64,000 bases of DNA from Ginglymostoma cirratum. Taxonomy: Eukaryota. Positions 5,789 to 63,150 of this stretch are shown here, piece after piece (the stretch's first letter is position 1; each line of letters begins with the position of its first letter). The stretch spans positions 25,584,533-25,648,532 of the forward strand of contig JAHRHZ010000062.1 in the NCBI GenBank assembly GCA_024137785.1, in the 5' to 3' direction. The notes beneath the pieces were generated by a model. That model saw only the letters and a list, made by a program, of their open reading frames with translations. It made no database searches and was not told the origin of the DNA. Position numbers and translations under genes: made by a program.

Positions 5789-6102
5789 TTAGAATGCCAG
5801 ACGCATATTTTTTTCCATAAATTCTCTTGTTTCTGGGTGAATAAACTCACATCTGATTCCTATCCCATTATCAGATTCTACTGGTGTAAATTCTATACTT
5901 GTTAGAGATGAGAAGAGACCATTTTCAGCAACTTCAGGCTTAGTATAAGCCACCAGACCCATGAAGGGTTCCTCTCCTTTAAACCACCTAATTTCAATTT
6001 CTTGAGGTGCATAATCAGTCAGTGAAACGGTGAAAGTTGCCACTTTGTTTTTCTCTGGTTTCACTGGGTTACATTTGATTTCCGACAGAGTGGGAGGGGA
6101 AC
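5789..6102 (-). CDS. Gene A exon 10 (terminal coding): post-TM C1-like domain 6
   Basis: Acceptor ttctgttttaag|GT. SPPTLSEI..ATFTVSLTDYAP..IRWFK..NGLFSSLTS..IRCEFIHP..LAF then TAA at 5791-5789. B-strand Cys replaced by Val. Confidence 0.88.
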
Positions 6103-9100
6103 CTTAAAACAGAACAGAACGTACAAATTATGAGTGTGCACATTATCTGCAGTGATAGTTTGTCTCAATGTTACAGTAAGTGTTCTTGACATAACTTCAG
6201 CAAATTCAATTGTTCAATTTAGCAAATTCAGTTACTACTTCATATGGAACAGTAAGAATCAGGAGATATCAAACATTGGACCAAGAAATATTTGGGATTG
6301 ACAAACGAGATAAACATTCAAAGGGATATCATTTTTAATAAGGCCATGAAATAGATTTCCCAGATCATTTGCACTCCAGAATACTAAAAGAATTAGTAGA
6401 AGCATTAAAAGGCTTCAAAAAAATTGTGAATTCTTCCAAGTTGACTGGAAGGCAAATATTATTTTTCCTGCTTAACAGTTCAGAATATAGCATGAAATTA
6501 CTGAACTGTTAGAAAAGCATGGATAGTCAACTTGGATTTACAAAAGGTGGCTCATCTTTTGGTGAGGCCTAAAGCACCCTCTGCATAGTAAACAACTATG
6601 CATCCAAAAAGGTGGTTTTAACAGCATATAGTCATGACATTTGGGTGAGCTCTCAGTAATGGCTTCAAGTTCCGCATCTGGGATCATGCTTTGATTAGTT
6701 ATTCTCACTAAGTTTAGAATGGCAAAGAGTAATGTTTGATCATCTGGCAGGTTCTAGTCTTCTGAAACCAAAGAATTGGTGCATTCACCCATCCAGGCCC
6801 ATTTATAACAAATAGAAAAGCACTGGAAATAGGTATCCAGGAGCAGACTGGCACTTTCCTAATTGACATTTTTTTTCTTAGAAATCCATGATAAATTCAA
6901 TTCTGTTCTTGTTTCTTAAATTATTCAATGCTCTAGTTCTACAGTAATTAGGATTTTGTACAATTTTAAACACACCTGGAAGATTCAAACACAGCTGCTT
7001 TTGAATAGAATTGGGTGAGGCTTCATGCATCACTTCGAATACAATTTCCTTATTATAATCCAAAGCTGTTGGCGTTAACTCCATGCTGGAAAATAACTGA
7101 TAATAGCCACTTTTTTCCTTCTGAGGCTCTGTGGTTGTGATTCCACTAGAGACATACTTGTTATTCATTAGCCATCTGGCAGAGGATACATTTCCAGAAA
7201 AATTTTTTACGTGGCATTTAAGAACAAGACGTTTTCCATAGGATGGAATTTCTGGCTCTGGAACGATGTCAGAAACTACTGGAATTCCTGTTTGGAAACA
7301 ACAAGAAATTGTTCATCAGGCTTTTGTATCCCACATCCAAGCTGATTCCACAACAAGATCTATTGTACCCATATCACTACTCATTATTGCACTGGTACCT
7401 TCCCTATTTAAGAAATCACCTCATTTTCCTTTTACTATTCCCCAGGAACGTTAAACATCCTTGCACATTCTTATCACATTTGGATTATCGCTCACCTCTT
7501 CAATACCCTGCACTTCACATTTCTTTTGATTTTTTTTAAAACTTCCCTTCAACTGAACACTCCCCCTTGAGCTAATTAGTTTAAAACCCTTTCTACAAAG
7601 TTAATTATACAATTTTCCAGGATACTGGTCCCAACATAGTTCAAATGAAACCCATCCCAACAAACTTCTCTTTCTCCAGTCCTCCAGAACTCATTTCTCC
7701 CAAGGCATCTTTGAACCATACATTTACCTCTTTAATCTTAATTATCTTTTATCAATTTGCATCTGGCTCAGACATTAATCTGAGGATTACCACCTTTGTG
7801 ATTGTGTTCAATTTAGCCCTGAAGTGCTCATAATCCCCTCAGCAAAACCTCTTTTCCTAGTTCTACTTATGGCATTTACGCATATGTGGACCACAACAAT
7901 TCGATCCTTCCCTTCCTGTTTCAAGTTCCTCTCCAGTCCAGAAAAGATGTCCTGAATGTGACACCAGGTAAGGGACACAGCCTTTGGAACTGTTGTTGTT
8001 GCAGGAGAAAGTGCCATTACCTAAACTATGCAATCCCTATTATTACCTCATTTCTCTTTTCTCCACCAAGCAACTCTCAAAGAGCACACCCCCTCAAAAA
8101 AACAACTTAACTGCCACTCATGAACATGGTGTGGTTAGTTTTCTCATACACCCTAAAGTCTATGACCCTGTCAATACCAAGAGCAACTTCATACCGTTTT
8201 CAATAAGGTGAATGGTTGAGGCTACTCCAAAGCTAAATTGTGAATCCAATACATGCCACACTCTCAGTCACACACTCCTGCTGCAGACCACAAACATATT
8301 TGATGTCATTAACTTAAAGGGTGTGACTTTCTCCTGCAAGTGTGTCCAGTATCTCTCTTCATTTTTGATGTGTCTCAGTGTCCACAGTTCACAGTCCAGC
8401 TCGTTAACTGAGCTTAAGTTCCTCAAGCAACCACTACTTGTGCAGATATGGTGCATCACAGATGTACCTGTGTCCACCAGTTCCCAAAGCTGCCAACCAC
8501 CACCTGCCCAGTCACCTCTATTATATTCAATTAATTAACGAGTCTGTTAAATATTTTTAAAGGTGAACTTCTTAACTATACTCTTCAGCTGTATTAATGT
8601 CTCCTGAATGAAATTAACTGACCAAAAGACATGGAGGAAATACCCACCAATCACCTAATTGTTTTCCTGTAATATCACACTTTGGCTGTTAAAGGAAGAA
8701 ACAAGTTAACAGATGTCTCTGACACTGGTTTTTATCTCTCACTGTTACTGCTCTTCTCACACAGACACCTACTTTCATGGCTCTTCATGCTGACTCCTCA
8801 TTCTCTTACACTGTTTTGAAAGCATGAGCTCCTTCGCTTCAGTTGTGCTGATTTACTCCAAACTCCTCCCAGTTTGCTTCACAGTGACTTTGCTGCACAA
8901 TCCTCCTAGTTCCCTTCACTGCAATTCTGACTGTTGCATACTCCTGCCAGTCCTCTCCGTTTTCTGCCTGTTAATCAGTTCTCAATTTATACTCGTACTT
9001 TTCCCATCAATCCATCTGCTGTAATTCAATTACTAGACTCCTGTGTGGAAACTAAATCAAACATTTGCTGAAAATCCAAAATACATTACATCTACTGGTT

Positions 9101-12100: not shown

Positions 12101-15100
12101 ACTTTCCTTCCAGTCAAATTTTCACTATGTTCCTCGCTCCCTTCCACCTCCTGATTTATAGCTACTGTTAGAAACCTTTTCGGTAAATCGAGATTAGCTT
12201 TGTCAGCATAAGAAATCTGTTTCACACAGAAAGAAAAATGGAAGCCTCCAGTTATTGGCAAAAGATTTCCCCTGCTACAAGCGGAGTTTAGATTACAAGA
12301 ATTGGCAATGTTTACCAAAAAAAATGGAAACAAGCATAAAGCCAATGAGCAGCATTGCCCTTTGAGCTCATTGAATTATGTCAATTCAAGATTCGTCAGT
12401 TCTGAAGAATGGTGTTCTGAAAAAGGGTCACCAAATCCAAAATGTTAACTCTGATTTCCCTCCACAGATGCTGCCAGACCTGCTGAGATTTTGCAGCAGG
12501 TTCTGTTTTCGTTAAACATTTATCAGTAAACTCAGTGCAGTCAATAAATTGTGATGAAAACAAATTTGAGTTGGATGTCAGATGTCCTGGTGGTTCAGAA
12601 GACCAAGTTCAAACAGAAAATTTCATTTCCTGATCTTCCCAGGAATAGAGATTACATCCAGCAAGCAGCAAATCAGCAAATAGTATGTTGAAGGAATTGA
12701 GCCTGTTGTTGTCAATACTATAGTTCCAAAGGAAGAATAGAAATGTTGTTATATACTTCAGCACAGATTGAGAATTAAAGAAGATTGAAGAGGTGGTGCA
12801 TACAACCCCCTTGGAAACCACTACCAAGAAGAAACTATAATGTCCAATGATTGAAGGCATAGTCAAGAAGAAATTTCCTGGTTCTAGGATCCAGGATACT
12901 GCAAAAATGAAAGTGTCTATTTCCACAGTTGTTCTCATTGAGGAAATCTGGGAGTCTGAAGGTCCTGCAGATTTGCAATGGAGCAAGTGCCTGTTTTAGT
13001 AGGAAACCATACTTCTGCAAAAGGAAATCTGAAGTTTTTTTAAAGGATTACTCTCATCTGAAGGGATTTTCAGCCTTCACATTGTCGGAAACAGAATAGA
13101 AGTCAACAAATTTCAACTCAAAGTTCTATCTATCTTCCAAGCCTGAAGATAATGTGTTTTGAGAGAATAGTCAGACTCCAGACTGCCCAAATGTGTAAAG
13201 AGACTTGTGGAGATACAGCAGTTGCAAACTAATTATGTAGACAAATATATAAATATTAATAATGGGTAGAAAAAAAGACTGGTTGTAGGCATTGTATAAA
13301 GCTGTAAGGATGAATATCCTGGAGTGAATTAAATACCACCTGCTACAATGATGCCATATGGACATGTGGGAGAACAACTTAGGATCTTAAATGAGCAAGA
13401 CCTACTACCTTTAGGTCTTCCACACAGCCTCTGCAATGAGGATAACCTTGTTGTCAAACAATAAACTATATTTCGTTTAAAACAAAGCCTCTTCTCATTA
13501 AACTATCAGGTGGTTTCTCACTGCCACATTGGACCAAACAGTCCCTAGGTGTCTCTACCAGGAGAAAGGATGGTAGCAGAAGTTCTACCGAAAGCTTACG
13601 CAACATAATGAGCAGTGGTGAAGATTCGTCTTACATCAGAGCAGGCAAATGTGATCTGTATCACTGAAGATTCTTCCTGAGAATATCAAGAAATGAAATT
13701 CTCTGTTTGTACTTAATCTTCTGAACCACCTCAGCATCTGACGTCAGAGACAAACCTGTCATCATGACTCTAGAGTATATGCAGTCAGGTCATAGATCAG
13801 CAGGATATTACTGGATGCCTATTCCTCTACCAAATGCCTATTATTACAATTATTTTGACTTTTTTGGCGAATGCATTGACTCAAAAATAACTCACGTTGA
13901 CAACTGAAAATAAGTATTAGAATTTTAAAATAGCTTTATAATCCAATTAGGACTTCAGGTTAAATGCAATCAAGCTTTAAAAATGTGACTGGAAAGCAGG
14001 AAGAATTGCCACTGTTTTTGTATTTTGTAAGCAGGAACACACCACTGCCTCTGGAAAATTTCAATATGATACAACAAATTTATATTTGGAGTTATCGAAG
14101 TGTGGTAAAACTTCACACACATTCCTAAATATAAAAGTGTGTAGCCTATACATAGTCTAGACTAAGTTTAGTACAGAAAAAATATACACTAAATTCATAC
14201 CTCCAAGATGAAGGATGAAACTAGATCTTGAAGGCTTGTGAGAAGTTGGGAAATGTAGAACCTCAACTTTGAATTCCATCTGATGATATTCTGGCTTAAT
14301 TAACAATTTCCATCGACTTTCACAGTAGAAGAAGCCAGTTTGTTCATCTTCCTGAGGTTCAGTAACAGTGATTCCTGCGTCATCAATTCTCTCATTATTT
14401 ATAAACCACATGAACAACGTTTCCTTTGGAAAGAAGCCATATGCATGACATATGATGGTTGCTTCTTTTCCTGCCTCTGGGAATTCTGGTTCACTTTTTA
14501 TGTATTTCACTAATGGTGGAGACACTGTAATAACAGAAAATATATAGTTAGACACAATAGAATATTGCAAGTTTCTATAATAACTCAGGAATTTTAAAGG
14601 TAGTACAGCTACAGGATGAGGTTACAACAAATCTAAAATTTTAGTTATTCACAACTATAAGTTATATCATTGATAATAACCATTTTGAAATATTATTGAA
14701 ACACAGAAGATAGGATTTGGCTATCCAGTCCATCAAGCCTGCTCTGCCATTCAATATGAACATGGCTGATCATCCAACTCAGTGCCCTGTTCCTGTTTTC
14801 TCCCCATATCCTTTGAATAGTTTCAAGGAGGGGTTGGATATAGTTCTTGGGGCGAAAGGGATCAATGTTTTGGCCTCATTCACTTTCTGTGGCAGAGAAA
14901 GTGACAATCTCACCACTCTCTGGGTGAAGAAATATTTCTCATCTCAGTCTTAAATAGCCTACCACTTCCTAGTCTACTCCAGTTAGAATTTTTTTTGAAA
15001 GATTTCCCCTTCAATTTTCTAAACTCCATTTAATGTAGTCCTATACAATTCAATCTCTCTTTAGTCAGTCCTGCTATCCCAGGAATTGTTCTGGTAAACC

Positions 15101-24100: not shown

Positions 24101-27100
24101 CAGGTAAAGAGAGGGGTATGGGGGAGAAAAATCAGTAGACATAAGATCAGACAACAAACACAATGTGAGTCACAAATCCCCAGAAGGGAGAGAGATGACA
24201 AAATAGAAACACATTATGCACACAAAAGATAGACAAAGCTATGGTGAATTGACACAGACAGAACAAAGATTAACAGATCAGTTCATGAGCTCAAAGTACG
24301 TTTAAAAAGTGTGAGATAGTTGTGAAAACAAAGAGGTGACAGCATGACTGTTCATACAAAACTAGGGTAGCAAAGAAGTGGTCATTTTTGAGCTTCTTTC
24401 CCTGCATTTAATTTGCTCCTCGGTTCGGAGCTATTTCATCTTGAGTCAAATGCTGAAGCCAGAGAACAGAAGTCACTGTAAAGATATCTAATTTTCCTCC
24501 TTTACTGGACATTTGTAGCTTTAAACTAAATTGTTCAGATATAAACAAATCCAAAGTAGCATTATTTTTGAAAAATATTTAATTTGGTAACTTTAATCTA
24601 ATGATTACTTTGTCATATTATTATCCACCGATCATTTACAAATACTTAAAAGTTTTACTGAAAATCTGGTTTGTTTTATGAGCTAACCCATGGTATTGGG
24701 CCTCCTTCCCTACACACTGCACTAATGTTGCTTGTGGTATAATTTTAGTTTCAATGCTCATATAGTCAGATGCTGCCATGTTCCAAGAAAAGCGTTCTAA
24801 ACAAAAACTCCAACAGAGGTGAGCCATCATTCTACAAAGCAAGAATTATTTAATATTTTTCACATTCTGTACTCTTAAAGTGAACTGAAGGATATGTTAC
24901 CTTTTTTAAGGTACTTCAGATACACAAAAAATCCAATGCCTGCAATTGCTGTACACGCCAATATGCTAAGGATTACACATCCAGTTATTATCCCTACTGG
25001 TACAACAACTTCTGGCTCTGTAGGTAAAACAAACAGTTGTTTTAACAGTGAATAGCAAAATAGAACAATATATGAAAATTGAGACTTATTCCAAGACAAT
25101 GGTCTAAAAAGTATATAAAACTACAAATGCATTGTAAGTTGACAGAGAAAACCGAACATCTCACGTTAGCATCTTCACAGGTGTAAGTAACATTAGTTTA
25201 TTTCCAGCAACTGTCAGTCAGCATTTTCAACATTTCTTGAACTTACATGAACTCCAGAATTTGAAGATTTATAAAAATTCTTCAGCATCATCACCAAAAG
25301 GTTGATTAAAAAAAGGGGGGAAAAGATGAATGTGAACTAAGCAGATATTTAACAACAGACTGCAGCAGCTTTTACAACATTAACAAAAGATGAAGAGAAT
25401 TGCTAATGCAAACGTTGGTGCCTTAGAAACAGAGAGAGAAGAAATTATGGAGAAAGAAATGGCAGGGATTACGAACAAATAAAAAAAACAGAAAAAAGCT
25501 CAGCAGGCCTGGCAGCATAGATCGTAGATCACAGAATCATAGAATCCCTACAGTGTGGGGACAGGCCCTTTGGCCCAACAAGTCCATGCTGACCCTCAGA
25601 GCATCCCACCCAGACGCATCTCTCCTATAATCCACCTAATCTACACATCCCTGAACACTACGGGCAATTTAGCATGGCCAATCTACATAGACTGCACATC
25701 CTTGGACTGTGGGACGAAACCGGAGCACCCGGGGGAAACCCGCACAGACAAAGGGAGAATGTGCAAACTCCACACAGACAGTCACCCAAGGGTTGAATCG
25801 AACCAGAGTCCCTGGTGCTGTGAGGCAGCAGTGCTAACCGCTGAGTCACCGTGCCGCCCTCGAAGAGAACAACAGCATCTGCGAAGAGAAATCAGAGTCC
25901 ACGTTTTGGGTCTAGTGACACTTCCTCAGAACAGAGAGAAAAGAATTCAGGGGCTTAAATCCAACAAATTGGCAAGTTGGTCAAATGGACAAACACCTGA
26001 CAGCTGAATTTCAATGCAGAGAAATGTGAGGTAATGCATTTTTTATAGAAGAACACGGAGAGACAATGCAGGCTCAACAGGACAACTTAGAGGGGAGTAT
26101 AGGAGCAGAGGGACCTCAGGATTCAAATGTATAATTCTCTGCAGGTGGCTAGGCAAGTTGAAATTGTTAAGGCAACTTATAAGATCCTGGAGTTTATAAA
26201 TAGAGGCACCATCGACTTGAGTCCCGGTGGATATTTTGCCCGTCCAGTAAGAGGAACAATGATGTCACTGAACAACTGCATGATGTTCTTCTTGGGGAGG
26301 ATGAACAGCCAGAGGTTGTGATCCAAATTAGTATTAACAACAAAGACAGGAAGGGGGATGAGGTCTGCAATCAAAATTGAGTGAGTTATGGAGAAAAATA
26401 GTAAGCAGATTTCTAAAATAGTGATCACCAGATTATTCTCAGTGCCAAAGGAGTAGAAATAGGCAGTTGTATCTTGACTGGAAAGCTCATGAAGGAAGGA
26501 GGGCTTTAGATTCCTGGAACACCAGGACTGACTCTTGAAAGATGGTGCCTGTGCAAGCCATATAGCCCGCCCGTGACAGAACGTGTCTGGTGTTCGTTAC
26601 TGGTGCGGTTGGGAAAGATTTAAAAGAATTCAGTAGGACATTGGAACAGAAGGCAGAAAGTAATATCAAGGTACATAAAATGCCAAAGAGAGGCTGCTAG
26701 TGCAGAAGTAGAGAAAAATAAGTTAATAAGTGAAGTCGGAATAAGGGTGTAAATAATGAAGTCTAAAATCAGAATTAGACTGCACGTATGTGAATTCACA
26801 GAACATCATTAAAATTGGGGAGTTATAGCTACAGATTGCCACATGGAATTACAATGTCTCTATAAAGACAGATACCTGTGTCAAGGAAGAGCAGGTATAA
26901 GTGTTAAATATTCTTGGTTACAAGGTGTTCACAAATGTAAGAAAGGAAATAAAGGGAGGGGTGGTGTTTCAGGTTAAGAAGAACATTGCAATACTAGAGA
27001 AAGAGGATTTTTTCAGAGGTTAGGGACAGAAACGATTTGGTGAGAGCTTAGGAATAAAAAGGGTGCAATTGCATTACTTAGCTCAGACTTCAAACCATCA

Positions 27101-30100: not shown

Positions 30101-33100
30101 ATGAAGCTCAAGTTCTTGTGGAAGGATGTTTTGAGGTTACCTAATAGTTAAATGAATGAACAAACAAACAAATCTAGTTAGGAATCCTGGATTGTTTGAG
30201 ATAATCCAGAATTAATATAAAAATATTAACAATGCCGATTTCAACCACCTTGGCTTGATGATGAACATCTAAGTTACATCCAAGAATGAAATCCAGGTTA
30301 CATCAGCTAGAGTTAGAAGCATGACAAAATTACATAAGTAGTATCTTAAATCCAAATGCATCAACATGATGCTGAAAAAGATCTTGCAGTCAATAGTGCA
30401 AAACATTGCACTCTAAGGGATGTGAAAGGTTGATTCTGAAGAAAGAAGACGAGAGGAAGATAACAGCTTTTGAAATGTGTGGCAGAGGATACTCAGTCAG
30501 TTGGAAGGATACAAAGAAAAGTGATTGAGTTAGATCAAGAGTAGAAGTTCAAAAATCTAAAAGGGCTGTTAATCAGAATTAGAGGGAGAAAGATTGACAA
30601 GTACAGACTTTGGAAACAAAGACACTGCGGCCCTGAACTGAAGCAACTGGAGAAATTAAGCAAACAAAAAAGAAAGGCAAAGAAGAAAGGCTGAATAGAT
30701 GGCTGCTGTTGAAACATGAGGGAAGACTGAACAAAGGCAGAGAGGAAGCAAGACGTTAATCAATATTTGCGGTAACATTATGATGAAAATGAACCAGTAA
30801 TTAACAACAAGGCATTGTCCCAGCTTAGATGGTATACTGGCAATATTGACCAAGTTCTAAAAGGTATGGGACCAGATTTTGCTGCTGTGCGGAATTTTAA
30901 AGCATTTCAAAGACAAGTTTGCTGAGGTATGATCAGAAAACAATGCTGCAAAGAAAGAGTAACTGGGATATTAGTCCAAAGCAGAACAAACACCTTATTT
31001 CTCTAAACAATGAGAATTAAGGATTGAGAACAAAGTGAGAAAGGACAAGGAAGGAACATGAAACAGCCTGGGTTAATTGAGTGTCAAATCAAGTTAAGGA
31101 AGAAAGGTTTGATACAGAAAGGTAGGACTTATACAGTAAATCCTGTAGATCCTCAGGAGTGTTGTGGAACAGAAGGGTCTAGGAGTACAGGTACATAGTT
31201 TGTTGAAAGTGGCGTCACAGGTGGACAGGGTGGTGAAGAAGGCATTTAGCATGCTGGCCTTCATCGGTCAAGGCACTGAATGTGGGAGTTGGGAGCTCAT
31301 GTTACAGTTGTGTGAGTTGTTGGTGAGGCCGCACTTGAAGTACATAAGTACTTAACTTCCGTACAGTTTTGGTCTCCCTGTTATAGGAAAGACATAGTTA
31401 AACTTGCAAGTGCAAAAAGAAGATCTACAAGGATGTTACCAAGACTAGTAGGCCTGAGTTACAGGGAGAAGTTGGCCAGGATAGGACTTTATTCTTTGGA
31501 ACATAGGAGAATGAGGGGCACAGATAGGATGAACGCATATAGTCTTTTTCAACTAGAGGGTATAGGTTTAAGGTGAGAGGGGAAAGATTTAAGAAGGGCC
31601 TGAGGAGCAACTTCTTCATACAGAGACTGGTGTGTACATAGAATGGGCTGCCAGAGAAAGCAGTTGAGCCAGGTACAATAGCAACATTTAAAAAGCATTT
31701 GGATAGGTACATGGACCAAATGCGGACAATTGGAACTAGCTGAGTGGGCACCATGGTCAGCATGGACCAGTTTGAGCCAAAGGGCCTGTTTCCATGCTGT
31801 ATGACTCCATGACTCTATGACACTAAAGCATCTGAAAAGATAGAAAAACAAAGGCAAAAACATTAAGATTTAAAATTTTAAAAACAACCTAAAATAACTA
31901 TTCACAATCAGAAGGAATGAGAGATCACACTAATGAGTGCCCACTTACTAGGGCAGACAGCTTAATTGCCAGTCCTTAACAATAATCTTACTGTTAAAAT
32001 CTACTTATGCTGATTATTAGAATTAACTTTCTGTGGTAAATTTAACAGATAATTAGTATTTAAGCACAGCAAATTCATGGAAATCATGAGAAGGTTAGCA
32101 TTTTTACAAAACTAATCACACAGCTGGGGAAAAAAATCAACTAGCAACTTGTATTGGTTCTCAGTTCACAGGATGTAACTTCTTTGCTTCAAGTTGATGG
32201 TTAATTTACGTTTGTCAGCAAAAGCTCCCTTTTCCTTCTAAGCAAAGTATGGCCCATTGCTACAATTGCTCCTGACTATTTGGAAAGCCAACAGAAGTTA
32301 TGTACTTATGTAGGGATATAGGGCAAGTTTGAAAGGGAAGTGAAACGTTTAACCAAGCAAATGGCAATTTCTTTTCATGTAGCTAAAAAGAGAAAATCTC
32401 ATGACACACAAATTATTTTAAATGCTTTACCACTACAATAGCGCTTTTCAAAATTGTCGAGTGTCAAACTTGTGGAAAGGCAACACATCTTACACAATAG
32501 GAATTACTGAACCACTCAGGACTCTTTTGGTGATATCTTTCTTTCAAGTTTTTTCAGAAAGCTTGATAGGCTATAACTATCATCAAATATTTTGTTCAAG
32601 CATTGTTGAAAACCAAACTTGAAACTCAGTTTTGGAAAGCTGTTAATTGTGGAAAACTTTAAATCAAACTTGATACAGCCATCAAACTCCATAAGCACAA
32701 CTTTCAATAGGGTTTATTCAGTTAGTATAAATTTCAAATTATTACCAAAACAGGGGCACTGAAGTTTCAGTTTAAAAATGGACCAAATAAATCCACAATT
32801 TCAAATTTAAGCACAAATACCATTCAGTTCAAAATTCCCCTTTGCCTATTTCATCAGTGCCACTAACCGTAAACCACAGAATAATTTCAAATGACTACGT
32901 TAAACCTTCATGTGTAATAACAGAGTAAAATTTCTGTGTTCTTTTTGTAGCTGCATTTTCTAACATAAACCAGGCTTCATGTACAAGTTCACGAAAACAT
33001 TAAACATACCTTTGACAGTCAGTTGGGCTTCCAGTTTTAAATCCTTATTAAGTGATTGGTGTTTTACATAGCAGATATAAATATTGCCACTGTCTTCAAG

Positions 33101-36100
33101 GGTTGGTCTCAACCTCAATCGGCTGGAAACGCTGTAGGTTCCATTTTCATGTTGAATTGGGGATCCTGTGCAGATGTGTTTTGAAAGCATTTGTTCCTCG
33201 TTTTTTGTTTTCTGTATCCAGCCCATCTCAATTGAGACAGGATAAAAATCAACACTGTCACATTTCACTGATTTCTCCGTACCATGTTCAATTGTGATTG
33301 CAGTTGAAGATAAGCTTACCTTGGGCAGGGCTGCAAATAACAATATATCAGATGTTTAATATTTGACGTAAGTATTCACCTGTTCACATCCTCTGGTTAT
33401 GTAATGATTGCACAGATTGAAATGTCTGGTGTTCAAAATATCCTTTCCTCACAGCTGTCCTCTCTCACTGCTCCTTTTATTCCTGTTGCTTCATGGTCCC
33501 ATACAACTTTGTCACCGGTCTGTCTGCTCTCAAAGGCTGGTGACAGGCTGTTGACTGATGTATTCTGTTTTGGATACTCCAGTTTGCTCCAAAAAGTAAG
33601 ATTTTCAAGAGATAACTATGCTTTATTAAAATTAATATTTTAGGAGACATGGTGGCCCACTAGAATTGAAAAGTATCGATGTACTGGGTTCTGTTCTAAT
33701 ACATGCTTTGGTTGTGCTGTCACCTGCCCTTTTGCAATGCTGTATACTTATCTCATCAAAAACCTCCTGCAATCAGGATGAAGGCTGAACACACAAGTGT
33801 TGCTCCAGCTGTCAACATTGCACATTTCTAGCCTTGTAGCTAGCCATGCTGTGCTGTCTGTAATTCATACATCTTAACTGTTCTGAAAAAGCCAACTACT
33901 TACTAACTGACAAAGGTTTCAGTTCACATCTCCTTTGTCACTAACTTCTCCAAGATCAATTTTGAGAACAAACATATTTGTGTTGTTTGACTGCCCTTCT
34001 TTCATAGTCCATCACAAAGTAGTCCTGTGGATCTGAACGCATTATCTAGAGGCAGAGAAAACAGGAATAGAGAAGGCAACTAATGACTTGTTTCATTGAG
34101 CAAGTGGTCCTTCAGCTTCCCGGTCACTAGAGACCAATAACTTAATGTTCTGATAAACATACCATGGCCTGACTGGCATGGGACTTCTGCCTAATAGCAA
34201 CACAGTCTAACCAATATCTAATGCCTGTCAAGCAGCAGCAAAGTGAATTCCTTCTTTGCTCAACTGGGGGCAGATGACACATTATGGTCTAGCAAGCATT
34301 AAGCATACTCACATCTACAGCTACAACTTTGTCAAAGCTCAATATTGCATGGCTCAAACAAAAACCCCAACAGCCATGACTGTGGCCAATGTGCTACATG
34401 CGGCAAATACAATGGACAGCACTGCACTAGATTGCTCATAGTCAATGATACCATCTGCACACAACTATTTTCATTTTAAATTTAATGCACTCACAATTCA
34501 GCAGACAATAAGAATCAGGTAGTGGCTCTTACCTGAAACAGTCATTGATGACTTTCCACTTCCATTGTCTGGGGTTATGAAAACAACACAAGTGTAGTCT
34601 CCCGCTTCAGAAAATTGCACACTTGGAAGAAAAAGGGAAGCTATTCCTTTCTTCAAATGATCATCAACAATTGTGGCTCCTTTTCTGTATGGTATATGTT
34701 TGCCAGCAATGAATTGATAAACCTCTCGTTTCTCTGTATCTAGAGAGCCTGATTTTTGGTAGAACCAGTGGACTCCCATGTTTTGAAGGTCAATTTCTCT
34801 TCTGAAGTCAGAAACTTGGCACTCCAGAACAACATCTTCATTTACAGTGGCTTTCACAATTCCTGAATTCATCGACACAATTAGGTTACCTTGTTCTGCA
34901 ACAATCAAGATCAAAATTATCAGTATAGATAATTCATCCAGCAGCCCAACTATTTTGATAAAGATGCTATCAGAACAATATATATCTTGAACATTAAGTC
35001 CTGAATCGACTGAAGTATTGCTATCATTTCAACAATTCCATCAACATCCTGCATTTGTGGAACACCTTCGACAACAATAATGCACCAAGCATTGCAGGAA
35101 AAAAAACACTAGAAGTTCAATGCTCAGCCAAAACAGGAGCCTAGATGATGTCAAAAGATTGTATGAAGGTCTTCATAAAACAAATGAGGCCCAAGTGGTG
35201 TATTCTAATGTCATTGGACTAGTAACTCAAAACCGAGATATGGGCATATCTGGCTATGCTAGAATTATTTGCCTAGAATTATTTGTCACCAGACCTGAAA
35301 CGTTAACTCTGTTTTCTCCTCCACAGATGCTGGCAGACCTGCTGAGCTTTTCCAGCAACTTTGTTTTTGATTTACAGCATCTGCAGTTCTTTTGGTTTTT
35401 ATCTGCGTAAAAGGGTTCAACTTCCATCAGTGCAGATGGTCCAATCTGAATTTCAATAGAAGGAGGAATTAAAAAATAGCTCTACAATAAAATTCAACCA
35501 CTGCTAATAACTGTGAAAAAACACACTGGCTCATTAATGTCATCTAAGGAAGGATGCTGCTGTTTTTACTTGCTCTGGCCTACATGCGACTCCAGACACA
35601 GAGCAACTCTCAAATAGGCAAATAATTCTAGCCTAGCCAGATATGCCCATATCTCAAGGATAAAATTTAAAACAAAGGTATAGATAAAAACGTGGAAGTA
35701 GACGGTCTTTGGCATGAAGAGAAAATGAGGTCAGAATTCCAACTTGGGATCAAACAGGACACTGCAATTGTAAATAGGATGGCTGAAACTGAGAGAATCC
35801 AACTAAGATAAAGGTGCCTATACTGCAGTGGGGGCATGGGGGCATGATTTTCAGTTTAAAGAAATTTCAACCTGTTTTTGATTGAACTGGATGTCAGACA
35901 AGCAAGCTGAGGGAAAGTGGCAGAGTTTGAAGGGAGGTGGTGGTGGTGGTGTCAAGCTGGGTGTGATTGGTGTACATGTAGACAAAGATAGTATGTCTTC
36001 ATTATATATCACCTCGGCACCATATAGTTGAAAATAAGGTTAGACCAAGGATAACTCCTCAAATATCTCCAGGGGCAAAGTTGGACAGATGTCATGACTT

Positions 36101-38155
36101 TTATAGCCATTTTGAGAAGAGAACATTGGCAACAAACATTTCCTGATCAGCATAAAGATGCTAGGTGCTTAGATACGAAGGGTAGCTGCTTTCCCTATTT
36201 CCATCTGTGTTCCAAAGAAAAGTATCTAGTGACAAAGCAGCACTTGGTGAAAATTATACCTGCTGGAAATTGTAACATTATCAACATAATATTTGCCCGT
36301 CAAAACTGGGGGCTTCCACAAGCAGTGAATACATTGTTTTGGAAAGGGTGCAGAGGAGATTTACCAGGATGTTGCCTGGTATGGAGGGAAGGTCTTATGA
36401 GGAAAGGCTGAGGGACTTGAGGCTGTTTTCATCAGAGAGAAGAAGGTTAAGAGGTGACTTAATAAAGACATACAAAATTATCAGAGGATTAGGTAGGGTG
36501 GACAGTGAGAGCCTTTTTCCTCGGATGGTGATGGCTAGCACGAGGGGACATAGCTTTAAATTGAGGGGTGATAGATATAGGACAGATGTCAGAGGTAGAT
36601 TCTTTACTCAGAGAGTAGTAAGGGCATGGAATGCCTTGCCTGCAACAGTAGTAGACTCGCCAACTTTAAGGGCATTTACATAGTCATTGGATAAACATAT
36701 GGATGATAATGGAATAGTGTAGGTTAGATGGGCTTCAGATTGGTTTCACAGGTCGGCACAACATCGAGGGCCGAAGGGCCTGTACTGCGCTGTAATGCTC
36801 TATGTTCTATGAAGAGAAAATTAAAAGAAAGCAAGCAATAGAAATAAGATATTCACACAACTCATTAAATTGGCTGCCTTGCATTTTCATGTTGTTTAGC
36901 TAAGGAGAGAGGCTGCAGGAACTCAGGTTATTACCACTGCTGCAGGGAAGGCTGAAAGGAGACCTAAGCGAGATATGTAAGATTGTGCGGGACAAGGACA
37001 GGGTGAACAGAAAGCAGCCATTGCCCTTAGTTAAAAGGTCAATAATAAGGGGGTGTGATTTTAAGGTGACAGACAGGAGGCTTAGAGGGAGTTTGGAGGT
37101 ATTTTCTCTCACCCGGAGGGTGGTGGAAATCTGGAATGCACTGCACGGCAAGGTAGTTGAGTTGGGAAACCTCAAAAGTCTTTAAAAGGTACATGGATAA
37201 GCTCTTGAAATGTCATAACATTGAAGGCTGGGGGCCAAGTGATGGTTTGGGGAACTAGTGTAGACTTAGAGTAGTCTTTCTTTGGTGCAGACTCCATGGA
37301 TCTCTAGTGTACAGTATGATTCCACAACCCTGTATTAAAGCAGGCTGTGCCCAGTTAGCTGATGGGGCACTGGGTCAGAACCTCAGATCAGGAGCTATGG
37401 AGTGAGACCAAGATCCTACCAGTGGTCAGTGCCCAGCTGTCCAACAGCCCGTGCATGGCAGAATAACGACATATATTTTTGAAAGGGATAGCAGGAACTG
37501 CCGATGCTGAAGAATCTGAGATAATAAGGTGTAGAGCTGGATGAACACAGCAGGCCAAGCAGCATTAGAGGCGCAGGAAAGCTAACGTTTCAGGTCTGGA
37601 CCCTTCTTCAGAAAGAAAGCCCTTTTTCTGCAGAAGGATCTCGACCCGAAACGTCAGCTTTCCTGCACCTCTGATGCAGCTTGGCCTGCTGTGTTCATCC
37701 AGCTCTACACCGTGTTATATCATATATTTCTGAAACACGTTATTCAAACTAATGTCATTTCCGTAACGAAAGTAGAAGCAAAATAGGTACAATTGTATTT
37801 TAAAAAGCGCAGAAATGCTGAAGGTCACTGGCCCCGAAACATTAATTCTGTTTTCTCTCTCCAGATGGTGAATTTCTGAGTTTCTCCAGCTCGACGAAGA
37901 ATTTAGGCTTTATTTAGCCAATTTCAAAACAAAACATATTAAATAGAGGCCTTGGATAGGAAATGCCCATCTCATGTTTTACACCCGGAGAAAATTCACG
38001 GGCAAAGTACAAAGGCGGAACTTTTGCACGCAGCATTCCCGAAGCCGGCCGAATGGCCGCTCCCCCTATCCCCGACCTTTACCTGAGTGCGGTACCAGGG
38101 TCAGCAGCACTAACACCAGGACCTGAGGCAGCAGCGAGCTCCTCACCGGGCCCAT
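5789..38155 (-). CDS. Gene A (spliced, 10 exons, ~980 aa): B7-H6/NCR3LG1-like type I membrane protein, SP-IgV-IgC1-TM followed by six C1-like Ig domains
   Basis: Exons 38155-38083, 34895-34533, 33330-33010, 25017-24901, 23676-23248, 20426-20049, 19044-18733, 14524-14201, 7287-6976, 6102-5789. All introns are GT..AG and phase 1; lengths 73+363+321+117+429+378+312+324+312+314 = 2943 nt give one open frame ending TAA. The V and first C1 resemble human B7-H6 from recall. No symbol given because orthology is untested. Confidence 0.85.
6976..7287 (-). CDS. Gene A exon 9: post-TM C1-like domain 5
   Basis: Acceptor tttccaaacag|GA, donor CCAG|GTGTG, 312 nt; extends ORF 6878..7168 upstream. GIPVVSDI..LVLKCHVKNF..ARW..SGYYQLFSSMELTP..IVFEVMH; F-strand Cys replaced by Phe. 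Confidence 0.88.
7560..8500 (-). mobile_element. Degraded CR1 ORF1 remnant (Zn-finger/zipper + SGNH-esterase-like)
   Basis: HIC..C..ELDCELWTLRHIK (8268..8477) and IQDIFSGLERNL..IVVVHICVN (7808..8017) resemble shark CR1 ORF1p. Confidence 0.6.
9678..9912. repeat. Palindromic repeat (second subfamily, GCTGGAAAAGCTCAGCAGG type)
   Basis: Arms GAAGTTGCTGGAAAAGCTCAG..TTCCTCAG / CTGAGGAA..CTGAGCTTTTCCAGCAACTTC. Related copies or half copies near 1055-1150, 5380-5610, 12415-12510, 35290-35400, 59000-59225 and 63251-63445. Confidence 0.75.
9930..10247 (+). mobile_element. CR1 3' end
   Basis: FKVRG..FFTQRVDCMWNKLPEEVV remnant and CR1 3' UTR ending CATGCTGTATGACTATG. Confidence 0.75.
10520..12170 (-). 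mobile_element. Old degraded CR1 fragments
   Basis: Degenerate 3' UTR and RT remnants (e.g. minus-strand YSPVSMMS near 11870); boundaries approximate. Confidence 0.55.
14201..14524 (-). CDS. Gene A exon 8: post-TM C1-like domain 4
   Basis: Acceptor ttctgttattacag|TG, donor GGAG|GTATG, 324 nt. ATIICHAYGFFP..MWF..EFKVEVLH; F-strand Cys replaced by Val. Confidence 0.9.
14700..15150 (-). mobile_element. Degraded CR1 3' fragment
   Basis: Minus strand FFTQRVVRLS-type remnant and CR1-type 3' UTR. Confidence 0.6.
16190..17230. mobile_element. Two abutting degraded CR1 fragments (+ about 16190-16890, - about 16890-17230)
   Basis: ORF 16991..17179 LGLHVHRSLKA..RGIEYRNRE (minus); plus-strand YEDRLSRMGLYSL at 16449. 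Confidence 0.65.
18733..19044 (-). CDS. Gene A exon 7: post-TM C1 domain 3
   Basis: Acceptor tttttttccacag|CT, donor TTAG|GTAAGT, 312 nt. ASCRIYSFFP..VIW..DGLYYFTSRF..LTCEFQHES; both Cys present. Confidence 0.9.
20049..20426 (-). CDS. Gene A exon 6: post-TM C1 domain 2
   Basis: Acceptor aaacaaag|TT (weaker pyrimidine tract), donor ACAG|GTACT, 378 nt. VTCPITGFKP..ITW..YICEVTHP; both Cys present. Confidence 0.87.
22735..23010 (+). mobile_element. CR1 3' fragment
   Basis: LNRLGL..TRGH..FTQRVACVWNELPEEVV. Confidence 0.7.
23248..23676 (-). CDS. Gene A exon 5: post-TM C1-like domain 1 with long polar insertion
   Basis: Acceptor tcttttatag|TT, donor GGAA|GTAAGT, 429 nt. VPPKVS..LMNCQISGYRP..IRW..NNDGS..ILQVQVHH; the F-strand Cys is replaced. 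Confidence 0.87.
24901..25017 (-). CDS. Gene A exon 4: transmembrane exon EPEVVVPVGIITGCVILSILACTAIAGIGFFVYLKYLKK
   Basis: Acceptor ttttacctacag|AG, donor AAAG|GTAAC, 117 nt, phase 1/1. Long hydrophobic run followed by basic stop-transfer KYLKK. Confidence 0.88.
25530..25860 (-). mobile_element. tRNA-derived HE1-type SINE
   Basis: Minus GGCACGGTGACTCAGCGGTTAGCACTGCTGCCTCACAGCACCAGGGAC..GGTTCGATT, V-type core, tail GATTCTATGATTCT. Confidence 0.85.
26190..29410 (+). mobile_element. Old, heavily degraded long CR1 copy (ORF1 esterase, endonuclease and RT remnants)
   Basis: Scattered CR1 remnants (QPEVV-type ORF1 segment near 26300, EHLVDSD near 27390, VEIAEVLAIIFQ at 28085, QHGF at 28293, 3' end near 29300); no intact ORF; boundaries approximate. 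Confidence 0.65.
31115..31822 (+). mobile_element. CR1 3' fragment
   Basis: ORF 31164..31355 LGVQVHSLLKVASQVDRVVKKA..LVRPHL; tail ATGACTCCATGACTCTATGA. Confidence 0.85.
33010..33330 (-). CDS. Gene A exon 3: extracellular IgC1 domain
   Basis: Acceptor tttgcag|CC, donor AAAG|GTATG, 321 nt. C1 hallmarks C..DFYP..W..NGTYSVSSRL..YICYVKH; both Cys present; NGT sequon; ICTGSPIQHENGTY resembles B7-H6 VITGPTIKNMDGTF. Confidence 0.92.
34533..34895 (-). CDS. Gene A exon 2: IgV domain, B7-H6-like
   Basis: Acceptor ttgattgttgcag|AA, donor TCAG|GTAAG, 363 nt. DVVLEC..MGVHWF..REVYQF..YRKGATI..LKKGIASLFLPSVQFSEAGDYTCVVFITP parallels recalled B7-H6 ([52 protein letters not shown]). Both Cys and the Trp are present. 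Confidence 0.92.
36336..36811 (+). mobile_element. CR1 LINE 3' end
   Basis: ORF 36339..36683 LERVQRRFTRM..RGRFFTQRVV; tail CTCTATGTTCTATG. Confidence 0.9.
36895..37330 (+). mobile_element. Degraded CR1 3' fragment
   Basis: LQELRL..LKGDL..TRRVVEIWNAL remnants. Confidence 0.7.
37488..37720. repeat. Penelope-derived palindromic repeat
   Basis: GATAATAAGGTGTAGAGCTGGATGAACACAGCAGGCCAAGC ... GCTTGGCCTGCTGTGTTCATCCAGCTCTACACCGTGTTAT inverted arms of about 90 bp. Confidence 0.8.
38083..38155 (-). CDS. Gene A exon 1: signal peptide MGPVRSSLLPQVLVLVLLTLVPHS
   Basis: Not in the ORF track. ATG in strong Kozak context (gccATGG), 24 codons + 1 nt, hydrophobic core VLVLVLLTLV, donor TCAG|GTAAAG, inside the only CpG-rich patch of the window. 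Confidence 0.85.
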
Positions 38156-38242: not shown

Positions 38243-38254
38243 AGTTTCACTTTC
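38243..38254. promoter_or_regulatory. ISRE / IRF-binding element
   Basis: AGTTTCACTTTC (minus strand GAAAGTGAAACT) matches the ISRE consensus AGTTTCNNTTTC exactly, 88 bp upstream of the ATG. Confidence 0.7.
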
Positions 38255-38863: not shown

Positions 38864-40131
38864 GAGAACATGGAACAGTACAGCACAGTTCAGGCCCTTC
38901 AACACACCATATTATGCTGACCTATTATCCTACTCTAAAAATCAAACTAATCTGCATACCCTTCATTTTACTATCATCCATGTGCCTATCCAAGAGTCAC
39001 TTAAATGTCCCTAATGTATCTGACTCCACTACCACTGCTGGCAGAGCATTTCATGCACCCACCACTCTCTGTGTAAAGAACCTACCTCTGACATCTCCCC
39101 TACACCTTCCTCCAATTACCTTAAAATTATGCCAATTTATAATAGTCATTTCCGCCCTGGGAAAAAGTCTCTGGCTATCCACTTGATCTATGCCTTTCAT
39201 CACCTTGTAAACCTCTATCAAGTCACCTCTCATCCTTCTTCACTCCAATAAGAAAAGCCCTAGCTTCCTCAACCTTTCCTTATAAGACCTGCCCTCCAGT
39301 CCAGGCAGCATCCTGGTAAATCTCCTCTGCACCCTCTCTAAAGCTTCCTCATCCTTCCTATAATGAGGCAACCAGAACTGAATACAATATTCTATGTGAG
39401 GTCTAACCAGGGTTTTATAGAGCTGCAGCATAATCTCACGGCTCTTAAACTCAATACCCCTGCCAATGAAAGCCAACACACCATATGCCTTCTTAACAAC
39501 CCTATCAACTTGGGTGGCAACTTTGAGGGATCTATGGACGGACCCCAAGATCCCTGTGTTCCTCCACACTGCCGAGAATCCTACCATTAACTCTGTATTC
39601 TGCATTCAAATTCGATCTTCCAAAATGAATCACTTTTCTGGGTTGAATTCCATCTGCCACTTCTTTGTCCAGCTCTGCATCCTGTCAATGTCCCTTTGCA
39701 ACCTACAACAGCACTCCACACTATCTACAACTCCACCAACCTTCGTGTCATCAACTAACTCATTAACCCACCCTTCCACTTCCTCATCCAAGTCATTAAT
39801 AAAGATCACAAAGAGCAGAGGTCCCAGAACAGATCCCTGCGGAACACCACTGGTCACCGAGCTCCAGGCTAAATACTTTCCATCTACTACCACCTTCTGT
39901 CTTCTATTGGACAGCCAGTTTTTTATCCAGACAGCCAAATTTCCCTGAATCCCATGCCTCCTTACTTTCTGAATGAGCCTACCATGGGGAGCCTTATCAA
40001 ATGCCTTGCTAAAATCCATATACACCATATCCACTGCTCGACCTTTATCAATGTGTTTTGTCACATCCTCAAAGAATTCAATAAGGCTTGTGAGGCATGA
40101 CCTGTCCCTCACAAAGCCATGCTGACTATCT
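38864..40131 (-). mobile_element. CR1-clade LINE, 5'-truncated, same subfamily as 2047-3178
   Basis: ORFs 39630..40112 (SCLTSL, YMDFSKAFD, GVPQGSVLGP), 39240..39605 and 39051..39233 are frameshifted RT segments; long runs nearly identical to the 2.2-3.1 kb copy. Confidence 0.93.
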
Positions 40132-52485: not shown

Positions 52486-52778
52486 TCAAGTTAATTTCAG
52501 AGTGAAATATCTGCTGATTGGGTCCATCTCAGTGATAATATCAACTTGGAAGTGACAATTATCATCTTCTTGCTTTGGTGTGTAAGTTAATGCAGTGGTG
52601 AAACCTACACCAGTTTCAAATGATTTGTTTTTAATGCAGTTGGTTTCATCTAAAGGGTAAATATCTTTGTACCAAGTGATGTGCGAGTCTTCTAAAGCAG
52701 ATCCCGTAACGGTGCAGGACATCGTTACAGGTTGGCCAGCTTGAGGATGTGGAGTCTTGCAAGTTATCTGTGATACCC
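52486..52778 (-). CDS. Gene B terminal exon: divergent Ig domain
   Basis: Acceptor ataattttacag|GG. VSQITCKTPHPQAGQPVTMSCTVTG..ITWYK..TALTYTPKQEDDNCHFQV..FTLKLT then TGA. A minus-strand AATAAA lies at 52392-52387. Confidence 0.8.
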
Positions 52779-62955: not shown

Positions 62956-63105
62956 CTGCAGACAAACAAAATAAACAGTATTTTTGAGTTTGTATTAATG
63001 AAAATGCCACTATTTTTAAAGATCTCAAGTATCCCTTAATAAATTGTCAACCGTTGTTTTCTTGAACAAAGTGTTGCATTTCACCGACCCTCATTTCCAC
63101 CCCCA

Positions 63106-63150
<45 letters not shown>
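63106..63150 (+). repeat. (CA)n microsatellite abutting a 100-N gap
   Basis: CA run from about 63106 to 63150, then N 63151-63250. Confidence 0.95.

What the first reader, a model, noticed from the sequence alone, without database searches (positions are those of the whole stretch)
5789..38155. B7-H6-like receptor whose cytoplasmic tail is a tandem array of six immunoglobulin domains
Seen: ten minus-strand exons splice in one frame to SP-V-C1-TM-(C1-like)x6-stop, 980 aa. There is one hydrophobic segment, followed by KYLKK, and no second TM or signal peptide downstream. Established: B7-family and other IgSF surface proteins keep their Ig domains extracellular with short or non-Ig tails (human B7-H6 has a Gag-related tail); C1-set domains are typical of lumenal/extracellular Ig, TCR, MHC, tapasin and SIRP regions; intracellular Ig arrays are mainly I-set (titin, obscurin) or filamin-type. 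Inference: type I topology places about 690 aa of C1-like domains in the cytosol, so a probable NKp30-ligand ectodomain is coupled to an intracellular Ig scaffold (reverse signalling, cytoskeletal anchoring, or binding of intracellular pathogen proteins). I know of no functional description; automated models with this architecture may already exist in sharks or amphibians.
Basis: partly seen in the sequence, partly recalled or inferred. Interest (0 to 1): 0.92.

Follow-up and report, generated by a model that had tools for sequence, protein, structure and literature searches.

The report
Nurse shark B7H6, long Ig-tailed form
The ten exons are real and expressed, but they are the nurse shark B7H6 gene already in GenBank; its six immunoglobulin domains behind the membrane anchor are an old feature shared by most jawed-vertebrate groups sampled, and nobody has shown where in the cell they sit or what they do.

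Summary
Ten minus-strand phase-1 exons (38155 to 5789) add up to 2943 nt, or 980 codons. RNA contigs from three studies join C1 to TM, TM to Ig3, Ig3 to Ig4 and Ig4 to Ig5.

The gene is not new. [quoted passage not shown] The tandem neighbour (52486 to beyond 64000) is QTT61906.1.

The architecture SP-V-C1-TM-(C1-like)n is the usual B7H6/NCR3LG1 model in chimaeras, sharks, rays, coelacanth, lungfish, sturgeon, bichir, amphibians, turtles, squamates and crocodilians.

For a cytosolic array:
- There is one strong TM and a positively charged stretch after it.
- The canonical disulfide is kept in 96% of ectodomain C1 domains but in only 38% of post-TM domains, in a fixed per-domain pattern.

Against it:
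- Ig4 and Ig5 keep both cysteines in nearly all species compared.
- RefSeq lists isoforms lacking exactly the TM exon in two lamniform sharks and a toad. These would secrete the whole chain.

I found no paper discussing the tail; the three most relevant papers were not readable here. The gene is already known, but the location of the tail is an open and testable question.

The parts
38083..38155 (-). Exon 1: start codon at 38155 and the signal peptide (24 codons plus 1 base); donor CAG|gtaaag
   Evidence: Sequence read. Hydrophobic leader. Matches residues 1-24 of QTT61907.1 with 1 difference.
34533..34895 (-). Exon 2: IgV domain
   Evidence: Pfam V-set 6.4e-10. Best PDB sequence hit is human B7-H6, 1.5e-14. 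Exact match to residues 26-145 of QTT61907.1.
33010..33330 (-). Exon 3: ectodomain IgC1 domain
   Evidence: Pfam C1-set 6.1e-11. Best PDB hit is B7-H6, 5e-12. Its 3' end appears as the loose end joined to the TM exon in runs X2 and X4.
24901..25017 (-). Exon 4: short stalk, the single transmembrane helix and KYLKK (117 nt, phase 1-1, so it can be skipped in frame)
   Evidence: KD 19-mer 2.61. AF2 helix at 269-289. Joint 24901->23676 in contigs of X1, X2 and X4 and in one raw read of X14. No coverage of the intron just downstream, so no read-through form was seen.
23248..23676 (-). Exon 5: post-TM Ig3. It is C1-like with a 35-aa loop. The B-strand Cys is kept; the F-strand Cys is replaced by Val; an invariant E-strand Cys is present.
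   Evidence: Pfam C1-set 4e-4. Alignments. pLDDT below 50 only for residues 348-369.
22420..22593 (-). Alternative cassette exon between Ig3 and Ig4. It brings a stop after 8 codons, giving a protein that ends after Ig3 or a decay target.
   Evidence: Joints 23248/23244->22593 and 22420->20426 in X1, X2 and X14. Translation.
20049..20426 (-). Exon 6: post-TM Ig4, with both canonical cysteines
   Evidence: Pfam C1-set 1.5e-7. Joint 23248->20426. C458 and C540 are invariant in 13 species.
18733..19044 (-). Exon 7: post-TM Ig5, with both canonical cysteines
   Evidence: Pfam C1-set 1.7e-7. Best PDB hits are SIRP-alpha D3 and IgG CH3. The loose end at 20049 reads its first codons.
14201..14524 (-). 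Exon 8: post-TM Ig6. The F-strand Cys is replaced by Val. It is the most conserved tail domain between nurse shark and Heptranchias.
   Evidence: 80% identity to Heptranchias.
6976..7287 (-). Exon 9: post-TM Ig7. The F-strand Cys is replaced by Phe.
5789..6102 (-). Exon 10: post-TM Ig8. The B-strand Cys is replaced by Val. The stop codon at 5791-5789 comes directly after the G strand.
   Evidence: The C-terminus ...MRLAF equals that of QTT61907.1.
38243..38254 (-). ISRE consensus GAAAGTGAAACT, 88-99 nt upstream of the start codon
   Evidence: It is the only match in the window. The function is inferred, not shown.

Best explanation
The protein has a signal peptide and a B7-H6-type V-C1 ectodomain, the presumed ligand face for NKp30-family receptors. 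A single membrane anchor follows, and then, with no linker, six folded C1-set Ig domains that end at the stop codon. This long form is the ancestral state of B7H6 in jawed vertebrates; human B7-H6, by general knowledge, carries a Gag-like tail instead. In the main isoform the array follows the only stop-transfer sequence, so standard topology rules place it in the cytosol. Most of its domains gave up the canonical disulfide before the living lineages split and replaced it with hydrophobic core residues, so they can fold without oxidation. My best guess at the role, which is inference only, is a rigid intracellular platform. It would tie surface display or clustering of the NK-cell ligand to partners inside the cell, much as the B30.2 domain does for the related butyrophilins. 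The in-frame TM exon may also act as a switch: skipping it, as annotated in other species, would release the whole eight-domain chain as a secreted protein.
For: Identity: the ten exon translations lie colinearly in QTT61907.1 with 4 differences, and the name comes from the depositors. Transcripts: the TM->Ig3, Ig3->Ig4, C1->TM and Ig4->Ig5 junctions are seen in contigs of three studies. Contigs break at sites where alternative forms were seen but not at the TM/Ig3 joint, and there is no coverage of the intron after the TM exon. Ectodomain. Family-wide architecture: proteins of 840-1200 aa with a leader, one TM near residue 250 and 4-8 C1-like domains after it occur in Callorhinchus, Pristis, Rhincodon, Latimeria, Protopterus, Acipenser, Erpetoichthys, Xenopus, Pleurodeles, turtles, squamates and Alligator. 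Logan contigs of 3.1-3.6 kb from skates carry the uninterrupted 958-codon ORF including the TM. Topology signals: there is one hydrophobic segment, and the net charge of the 14 residues after the TM is +1 or more in 87 of 96 distinct family members. Purifying selection: mean pairwise identity is 54-62% for tail domains against 65-67% for V and C1 across 13 cartilaginous fishes. Disulfide: both canonical Cys are present in 114 of 119 ecto C1 domains but in only 216 of 570 post-TM domains. The same per-domain pattern recurs in representatives from shark to reptile, and V, F, L, I or M fills the lost F-strand position. Fold: AF2 gives pLDDT of about 85-95 for all eight Ig domains.
Against: No experiment places the C-terminus. 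By general knowledge, C1-set domains are otherwise known only from extracellular or lumenal proteins. Ig4 and Ig5 keep both canonical cysteines in nearly all species compared. Ig3 has an invariant B+E cysteine pair, and Ig8 has an A+F pair in 11 of 13 species. That is what disulfide-bonded domains would look like. RefSeq isoforms lacking exactly the TM exon exist in Carcharodon, Cetorhinus and Bombina, and one lacking TM plus Ig3 exists in Lepidochelys. N-glycosylation sequons are at chance level on both sides of the membrane, so they decide nothing. The proposed function has no direct support.
Confidence: 0.6

Rival explanations
1. The Ig array does its conserved work outside the cell. Skipping the symmetrical 117-nt TM exon gives a secreted V-C1-(C1)6 protein, a soluble ligand or decoy. 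The tail of the membrane form is merely carried along.
For: TM-less isoforms that differ from isoform X1 by exactly the TM exon are annotated in two lamniform sharks and a toad, and a turtle isoform lacks TM plus Ig3. A frog relative of 1695 aa has 12 C1-like domains and no TM. Cysteine pairs are invariant in Ig3, Ig4 and Ig5. By general knowledge, C1-set domains are otherwise secretory-pathway domains. The stop sits right after the last domain, as in secreted Ig chains.
Against: In the nurse shark, contigs of three studies run through the TM/Ig3 joint without a branch, and TM-exon depth matches Ig3 depth. The deposited nurse shark entries, the UniProt elephant shark entry, the skate transcript contigs and almost all primary RefSeq models contain the TM. 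Four of the six tail domains lack the canonical disulfide that ectodomain C1 domains almost never lose. A 690-aa tail that misfolded in the cytosol should have been removed by a stop codon over 400 million years.
Confidence: 0.2
2. The array is lumenal even in the TM-containing form. This would need unconventional topogenesis, for example an internal signal or cleavage as in IGSF1, where Ig arrays on both sides of a hydrophobic linker end up outside the cytosol.
For: IGSF1 is a precedent for Ig arrays flanking internal hydrophobic sequence; this rests on general knowledge and the abstract seen. The hydrophobic run here is long, about 31 residues.
Against: IGSF1 needs two hydrophobic segments. 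Here there is only one, in the shark and across the family. It is followed by a conserved basic cluster, and Ig3 begins within about 3 residues of it. AF2 models a single helix.
Confidence: 0.05
3. There are two transcription units: a short V-C1-TM gene and a separate gene for the six Ig domains.
For: An ATG at 23707 lies just upstream of Ig3, and reading through the TM donor would give a short tail, GNISFSSL-stop.
Against: Contigs span C1-TM-Ig3 and TM-Ig3-Ig4 and beyond. There is no coverage between 24855 and 23794. The deposited 980-aa protein is colinear with all ten exons.
Confidence: 0.01

Closest known systems
Nurse shark B7H6, GenBank QTT61907.1 (980 aa), and its paralogue QTT61906.1 (1092 aa)
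   Same: It is the same gene. All ten exons match colinearly with 4 residue differences. The neighbouring gene B matches QTT61906.1 exactly over its four exons in the window.
   Different: Nothing beyond allelic differences. I could not read any paper linked to the deposit, so I do not know whether the Ig nature of the tail has been discussed in print.
Human B7-H6 (NCR3LG1), ligand of NKp30
   Same: Both have a V-C1 ectodomain; the shark one has about 30% identity and TM-score 0.87-0.91 to the crystal structures. Both are type I membrane proteins. Reptile orthologues with the long tail carry the same gene name in RefSeq.
   Different: By general knowledge, the human protein is 454 aa with a Gag-related, motif-bearing tail. 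The shark protein has six C1-set Ig domains instead. NKp30 binding was not tested here.
Butyrophilins (BTN3A1, BTN2A1)
   Same: They are B7-related V-C type I proteins with a folded intracellular domain that couples events inside the cell to recognition outside. This is the functional analogy I propose, from general knowledge.
   Different: Their intracellular domain is B30.2/SPRY, not Ig. No homology of the tails is claimed, and no ligand is known for the shark tail.
Shark UrIg2 (V plus nine C1 domains, then TM; PDB 9dmx)
   Same: It is a non-rearranging shark IgSF protein with a long run of C1-set domains. The B7H6 C1 exon hits it at 8e-11 (PMC12227049).
   Different: In UrIg2 the TM follows all the Ig domains, so the array is extracellular. 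Here the TM sits after the second domain.
Titin/obscurin-type cytosolic Ig arrays
   Same: They are tandem Ig domains that fold without the canonical disulfide. Titin I65-I70 is the top Foldseek hit for the whole chain.
   Different: Those are I-set domains in proteins with no signal peptide or TM. Here the domains score as C1-set, and two of the six keep both canonical cysteines.

Membership tests
B7-H6 / NCR3LG1 | N-terminal IgV plus IgC1 ectodomain closest to B7-H6 among B7 proteins | tested here: met
   The V exon hits B7-H6 at 1.5e-14, with the next best, CD276, at 1e-6. The C1 exon hits B7-H6 at 5e-12. The model superposes on 4zso, 3pv6 and 6yjp at TM 0.87-0.91 and rmsd 2.0-2.9 A.
B7-H6 / NCR3LG1 | Type I membrane protein: cleavable leader and one TM after the C domain | tested here: met
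   Hydropathy. AF2 helix at 269-289. This is prediction only.
B7-H6 / NCR3LG1 | Orthology accepted by curators or depositors | tested here: met
   The identical protein is named B7H6 in GenBank. Long-tailed reptile and frog orthologues are named NCR3LG1 in RefSeq. Synteny was not examined.
B7-H6 / NCR3LG1 | Binds NKp30 (NCR3) | not testable with these tools
   Needs a binding assay with shark NCR3-family receptors.
Cytosolic Ig arrays (titin-like) | I-set or filamin-type domains, with no signal peptide or TM in the protein | tested here: not met
   The domains score as C1-set, with I-set below threshold. The protein has a leader and a TM.
IGSF1-like proteins with Ig arrays on both sides of an internal hydrophobic linker, both lumenal | Two hydrophobic segments, or an internal signal peptide, between the arrays | tested here: not met
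   There is one segment only, in the shark and in the relatives examined.
Membrane/secreted splice pairs (as in Ig heavy chains) | Transcripts both with and without the TM-coding exon | tested here: inconclusive
   TM-less RefSeq isoforms exist in Carcharodon, Cetorhinus, Bombina and Lepidochelys. None was seen in nurse shark contigs, but contigs drop rare variants.

The most novel reading that the evidence does not exclude
In the main isoform, the six C1-set domains fold and work in the cytosol. As far as I know, this would be the first cytosolic C1-set Ig array. It would also be the ancestral intracellular module of the NK-cell ligand B7-H6, which the human protein at least lacks. TM-exon skipping would be a conserved switch to a secreted eight-domain form.
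Probability: 0.45. Interest if true: 0.8.

Novelty: already known. Interest (0 to 1): 0.5.

Why it matters
B7-H6 is studied almost only in humans, where its tail is a retroviral Gag remnant of unclear use. The data here show that the long form, with six or more folded Ig domains behind the membrane anchor, is the one found across jawed vertebrates, from chimaeras to crocodilians. If those domains are cytosolic, a domain class thought to be confined to the secretory pathway has an intracellular career. The oldest NK-ligand system would then have an inside-facing module whose partners are unknown. If instead they act in a TM-skipped secreted form, B7H6 would also be a soluble multi-Ig factor. 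Either answer is within reach of simple cell-biology experiments using the deposited cDNA.

Tried and rejected
- **Joined model.** I did not send the joined spliced model to any search. Exons were searched by reference, and full-length comparisons used database proteins.
- **Two-gene model.** Rejected by the RNA joints and the deposited protein.
- **TM exon downstream of Ig8.** The only phase-1 donor inside Ig8 (5851) would cut the domain before its F-strand Cys. No convincing TM open reading frame lies below 5789.
- **Read-through of the TM donor to a short tail.** No coverage was seen there.
- **N-glycosylation sequons as a marker of topology.** Observed/expected is 1.04 for the ectodomain and 1.10 for the tail, so this is uninformative.
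- **GxxxG motif in the TM.** It is present in only 38 of 96 distinct TM regions, so I dropped it.
- **Homodimer test of Ig6-Ig8 (two copies).** The tool gave no answer (score 0.00). This is not evidence either way.
- **Literature.** Seven full-text searches found no paper describing Ig domains in the B7H6 tail. Flajnik et al. 2012, Ohta and Flajnik 2015 and Kinlein et al. 2021 are not held, so prior description cannot be excluded.
- **Foldseek on the whole 980-aa chain.** Beyond the B7-H6 ectodomain match it gave only generic multi-Ig hits.
Full report
**What is in the sequence**

On the minus strand there are ten open exons with AG acceptors and GT donors. All are in phase 1:
- leader: 38155-38083
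- V: 34895-34533
- C1: 33330-33010
- TM: 25017-24901
- six further Ig exons: 23676-23248, 20426-20049, 19044-18733, 14524-14201, 7287-6976 and 6102-5789

The exon lengths sum to 2943 nt, which is 980 codons plus a stop. The stop falls directly after the G strand of the last domain.

Pfam calls the second exon V-set (6e-10) and the third C1-set (6e-11). Each of the six later exons is also C1-set (4e-4 to 1.5e-7). PDB sequence searches agree for the two tail domains I tested. Ig5 is closest to SIRP-alpha D3 and IgG CH3; Ig8 is closest to IgA and MHC class II beta-2.

Only two stretches are hydrophobic enough to act as membrane signals: the leader and the TM exon (Kyte-Doolittle 19-mer 2.61). Every other exon scores 1.44 or less.

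**Is it transcribed as one unit?**

I laid three Logan contig sets from three studies, plus one raw poly-A RNA run, on 19900-25200.
- The joints 24901->23676 (TM to Ig3) and 23248->20426 (Ig3 to Ig4) are present in X1, X2 and X4. The intron ends read CT..AC, as expected for minus-strand GT..AG. One raw read of X14 also shows the TM-Ig3 joint.
- The loose end at 25019 reads the last codons of the C1 exon. The loose end at 20049 reads the first codons of the Ig5 exon.
- One X4 contig of 2410 nt begins in the TM exon and runs through Ig3 and Ig4. Its remaining 1486 nt fit Ig5 to Ig8 (1262 nt) plus part of the 3'UTR.
- An X1 contig carries 356 nt upstream of the TM exon, then the TM exon and Ig3.
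- Contigs break where alternative forms exist, namely upstream of the TM exon and after Ig3. They do not break at the TM/Ig3 joint.
- The intron following the TM exon has no coverage.

In these runs I therefore see neither TM skipping nor a read-through short-tail form. Contigs drop rare variants, so a minor TM-less form is not excluded.

**Identity**

A HMMER search with the last exon found 168 relatives. The best are 960-1200 aa with 4-8 matching stretches. [quoted passage not shown]

QTT61907.1 is 980 aa. The ten exon translations lie in it colinearly; seven are exact matches and there are 4 substitutions overall. The window is therefore nurse shark DNA, and the finding is the B7H6 gene deposited by the shark immunology laboratory.

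The four Ig exons at 52486-63028 match the other entry, QTT61906.1 (1092 aa), exactly. That is a tandem paralogue lying upstream on the same strand. The whale shark RefSeq model XP_020389246.2 (981 aa) is colinear with the finding at 90-98% identity per exon.

I did not submit a joined model to any search. Exons were searched by reference, and full-length work used database proteins.

**The ectodomain is B7-H6-like**

Human B7-H6 is the best solved relative of both the V exon (1.5e-14; the next family, CD276, is at 1e-6) and the C1 exon (5e-12). An AlphaFold2 model of QTT61907.1 was built with 63 family sequences and reached mean pLDDT 85. Its ectodomain superposes on the B7-H6 crystal structures at TM-score 0.87-0.91 and rmsd 2.0-2.9 A.

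**The architecture is family-wide and old**

Relatives share a leader, a single TM near residue 250, and then 4 to 8 C1-like domains. They occur in the following groups:
- elephant shark, including a UniProt entry
- many sharks and rays
- coelacanth, lungfish, sturgeon and bichir
- frogs, salamanders and a caecilian
- turtles, squamates and crocodilians

Many of the reptile and frog models are named NCR3LG1. Skate transcript contigs of 3.1-3.6 kb carry an uninterrupted 958-codon frame that includes the TM. Some frog relatives have up to 14 domains behind the TM.

The first tail domain starts within about three residues of the basic cluster, with a recurrent (K/R)(K/R)-V/I-P-P junction.

**Does the array sit in the cytosol?** This is inference, with evidence on both sides.

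For a cytosolic array:
- There is a single strong stop-transfer segment.
- The 14 residues after the TM carry a net positive charge in 87 of 96 distinct family members.
- The TM exon is present in all nurse shark transcripts I could see.
- The cysteine contrast is striking. Both canonical cysteines are present in 114 of 119 ectodomain C1 domains, but in only 216 of 570 post-TM domains.
- The losses are domain-specific and the pattern recurs from shark to reptile: Ig3 keeps only the B-strand Cys, Ig4 and Ig5 keep both, Ig6 and Ig7 keep only B, Ig8 keeps only F, and Ig9 keeps only B. V, F, L, I or M fills the lost F-strand position. These losses predate the split of cartilaginous and bony vertebrates.
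- The affected domains are still well conserved. Tail domains have 54-62% mean pairwise identity across 13 cartilaginous fishes, against 65-67% for V and C1.
- The affected domains are confidently modelled as beta-sandwiches.

Against a cytosolic array:
- Ig4 and Ig5 keep both cysteines in nearly all species compared.
- Ig3 has an invariant B+E cysteine pair, and Ig8 has an A+F pair in 11 of 13 species.
- By general knowledge, C1-set domains are otherwise known only from the secretory pathway.
- RefSeq lists isoforms that differ from isoform X1 by exactly the TM exon in Carcharodon, Cetorhinus and Bombina, and one lacking TM plus Ig3 in Lepidochelys. Because the TM exon is 117 nt and phase 1-1, skipping it keeps the frame and would secrete the whole chain.

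Sequon density is at chance level on both sides of the membrane and decides nothing.

**Other isoforms in the nurse shark**

A 174-nt cassette exon (22593-22420) lies between Ig3 and Ig4. It is used at about the same depth as the direct joint in X1, at about a third of it in X2, and is seen in raw reads. It brings a stop after eight codons. The product would end after Ig3, or the transcript may be degraded.

In X4, an exon ending at 25247 is also spliced to the TM exon. Read in the TM exon's frame, the junction forms TAG.

**Mechanism and odds**

I take the main product to be a type I membrane NKp30-ligand with an intracellular, largely disulfide-free C1-type Ig array (about 0.6-0.7). The function of the array is unknown. 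My preferred guess is an intracellular platform that couples ligand display or clustering to partners inside the cell, by analogy with the B30.2 domain of butyrophilins. TM skipping may be a switch to a secreted form.

The main rival is that the conserved role of the array is extracellular, in the TM-less form (about 0.2). A homodimer prediction for Ig6-Ig8 gave no answer.

**Novelty**

The gene, its protein and its name are public, and the architecture is present in many public models, so the object is already known. In seven full-text searches I found no paper that mentions Ig domains in the B7H6 tail. However, the three papers most likely to do so are not held. The scan's other first-reader notes on this locus agree with what I found; they cover the paralogue, the cysteine losses, the ISRE and the TM-exon switch idea.

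Noticed in passing
window 52486-64000 (runs beyond the window end), minus strand: A tandem paralogue, gene B, lies here. Ig exons at 62603-63028, 60348-60722, 59156-59590 and 52486-52722 match GenBank QTT61906.1 (nurse shark B7H6, 1092 aa) exactly. It has one more tail domain than gene A and the same cysteine losses.
   Followed up: partly
window 22420-22593, minus strand: An alternative 174-nt cassette exon lies between Ig3 and Ig4 and gives a stop after 8 codons. In X1 its depth is similar to that of the direct Ig3-Ig4 joint, and it is also seen in raw poly-A reads. A second donor at 23244 is used with it.
   Followed up: partly
window about 25247-25330, minus strand: An exon ending at 25247 (donor CAT|gtaagt) is spliced to the TM exon in one X4 contig. 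In the TM frame the junction reads TAG. It may be an alternative 5' exon or a non-productive form.
   Followed up: partly
window 38243-38254, minus strand: The only ISRE consensus in the window (GAAAGTGAAACT) lies 88-99 nt upstream of the gene A start codon. This suggests interferon inducibility, in line with a stress- or infection-induced NK ligand.
   Followed up: partly
window 22732-23085: An intronic stretch has contig depth in the thousands in all RNA runs and many unlike loose ends. It is a highly expressed dispersed repeat and not part of the gene's mRNA.
   Followed up: no
window 2200-3111, 39240-40112, 43936-44382, 57252-57846: Fragments of LINE-type reverse transcriptase open reading frames lie on both strands, between and downstream of the two B7H6 genes.
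   Followed up: no
P0205 residue 274 (TM exon, window about 24955): A cysteine in the middle of the TM helix is invariant in all 13 cartilaginous-fish orthologues compared. Its role is unknown.
   Followed up: no
P0015, P0024, P0025, P0059 (frog proteins): Amphibian relatives have a TM near residue 330 followed by 8 to 14 C1-like domains (total length up to 2158 aa). A 1695-aa form has 12 such domains and no TM.
   Followed up: partly
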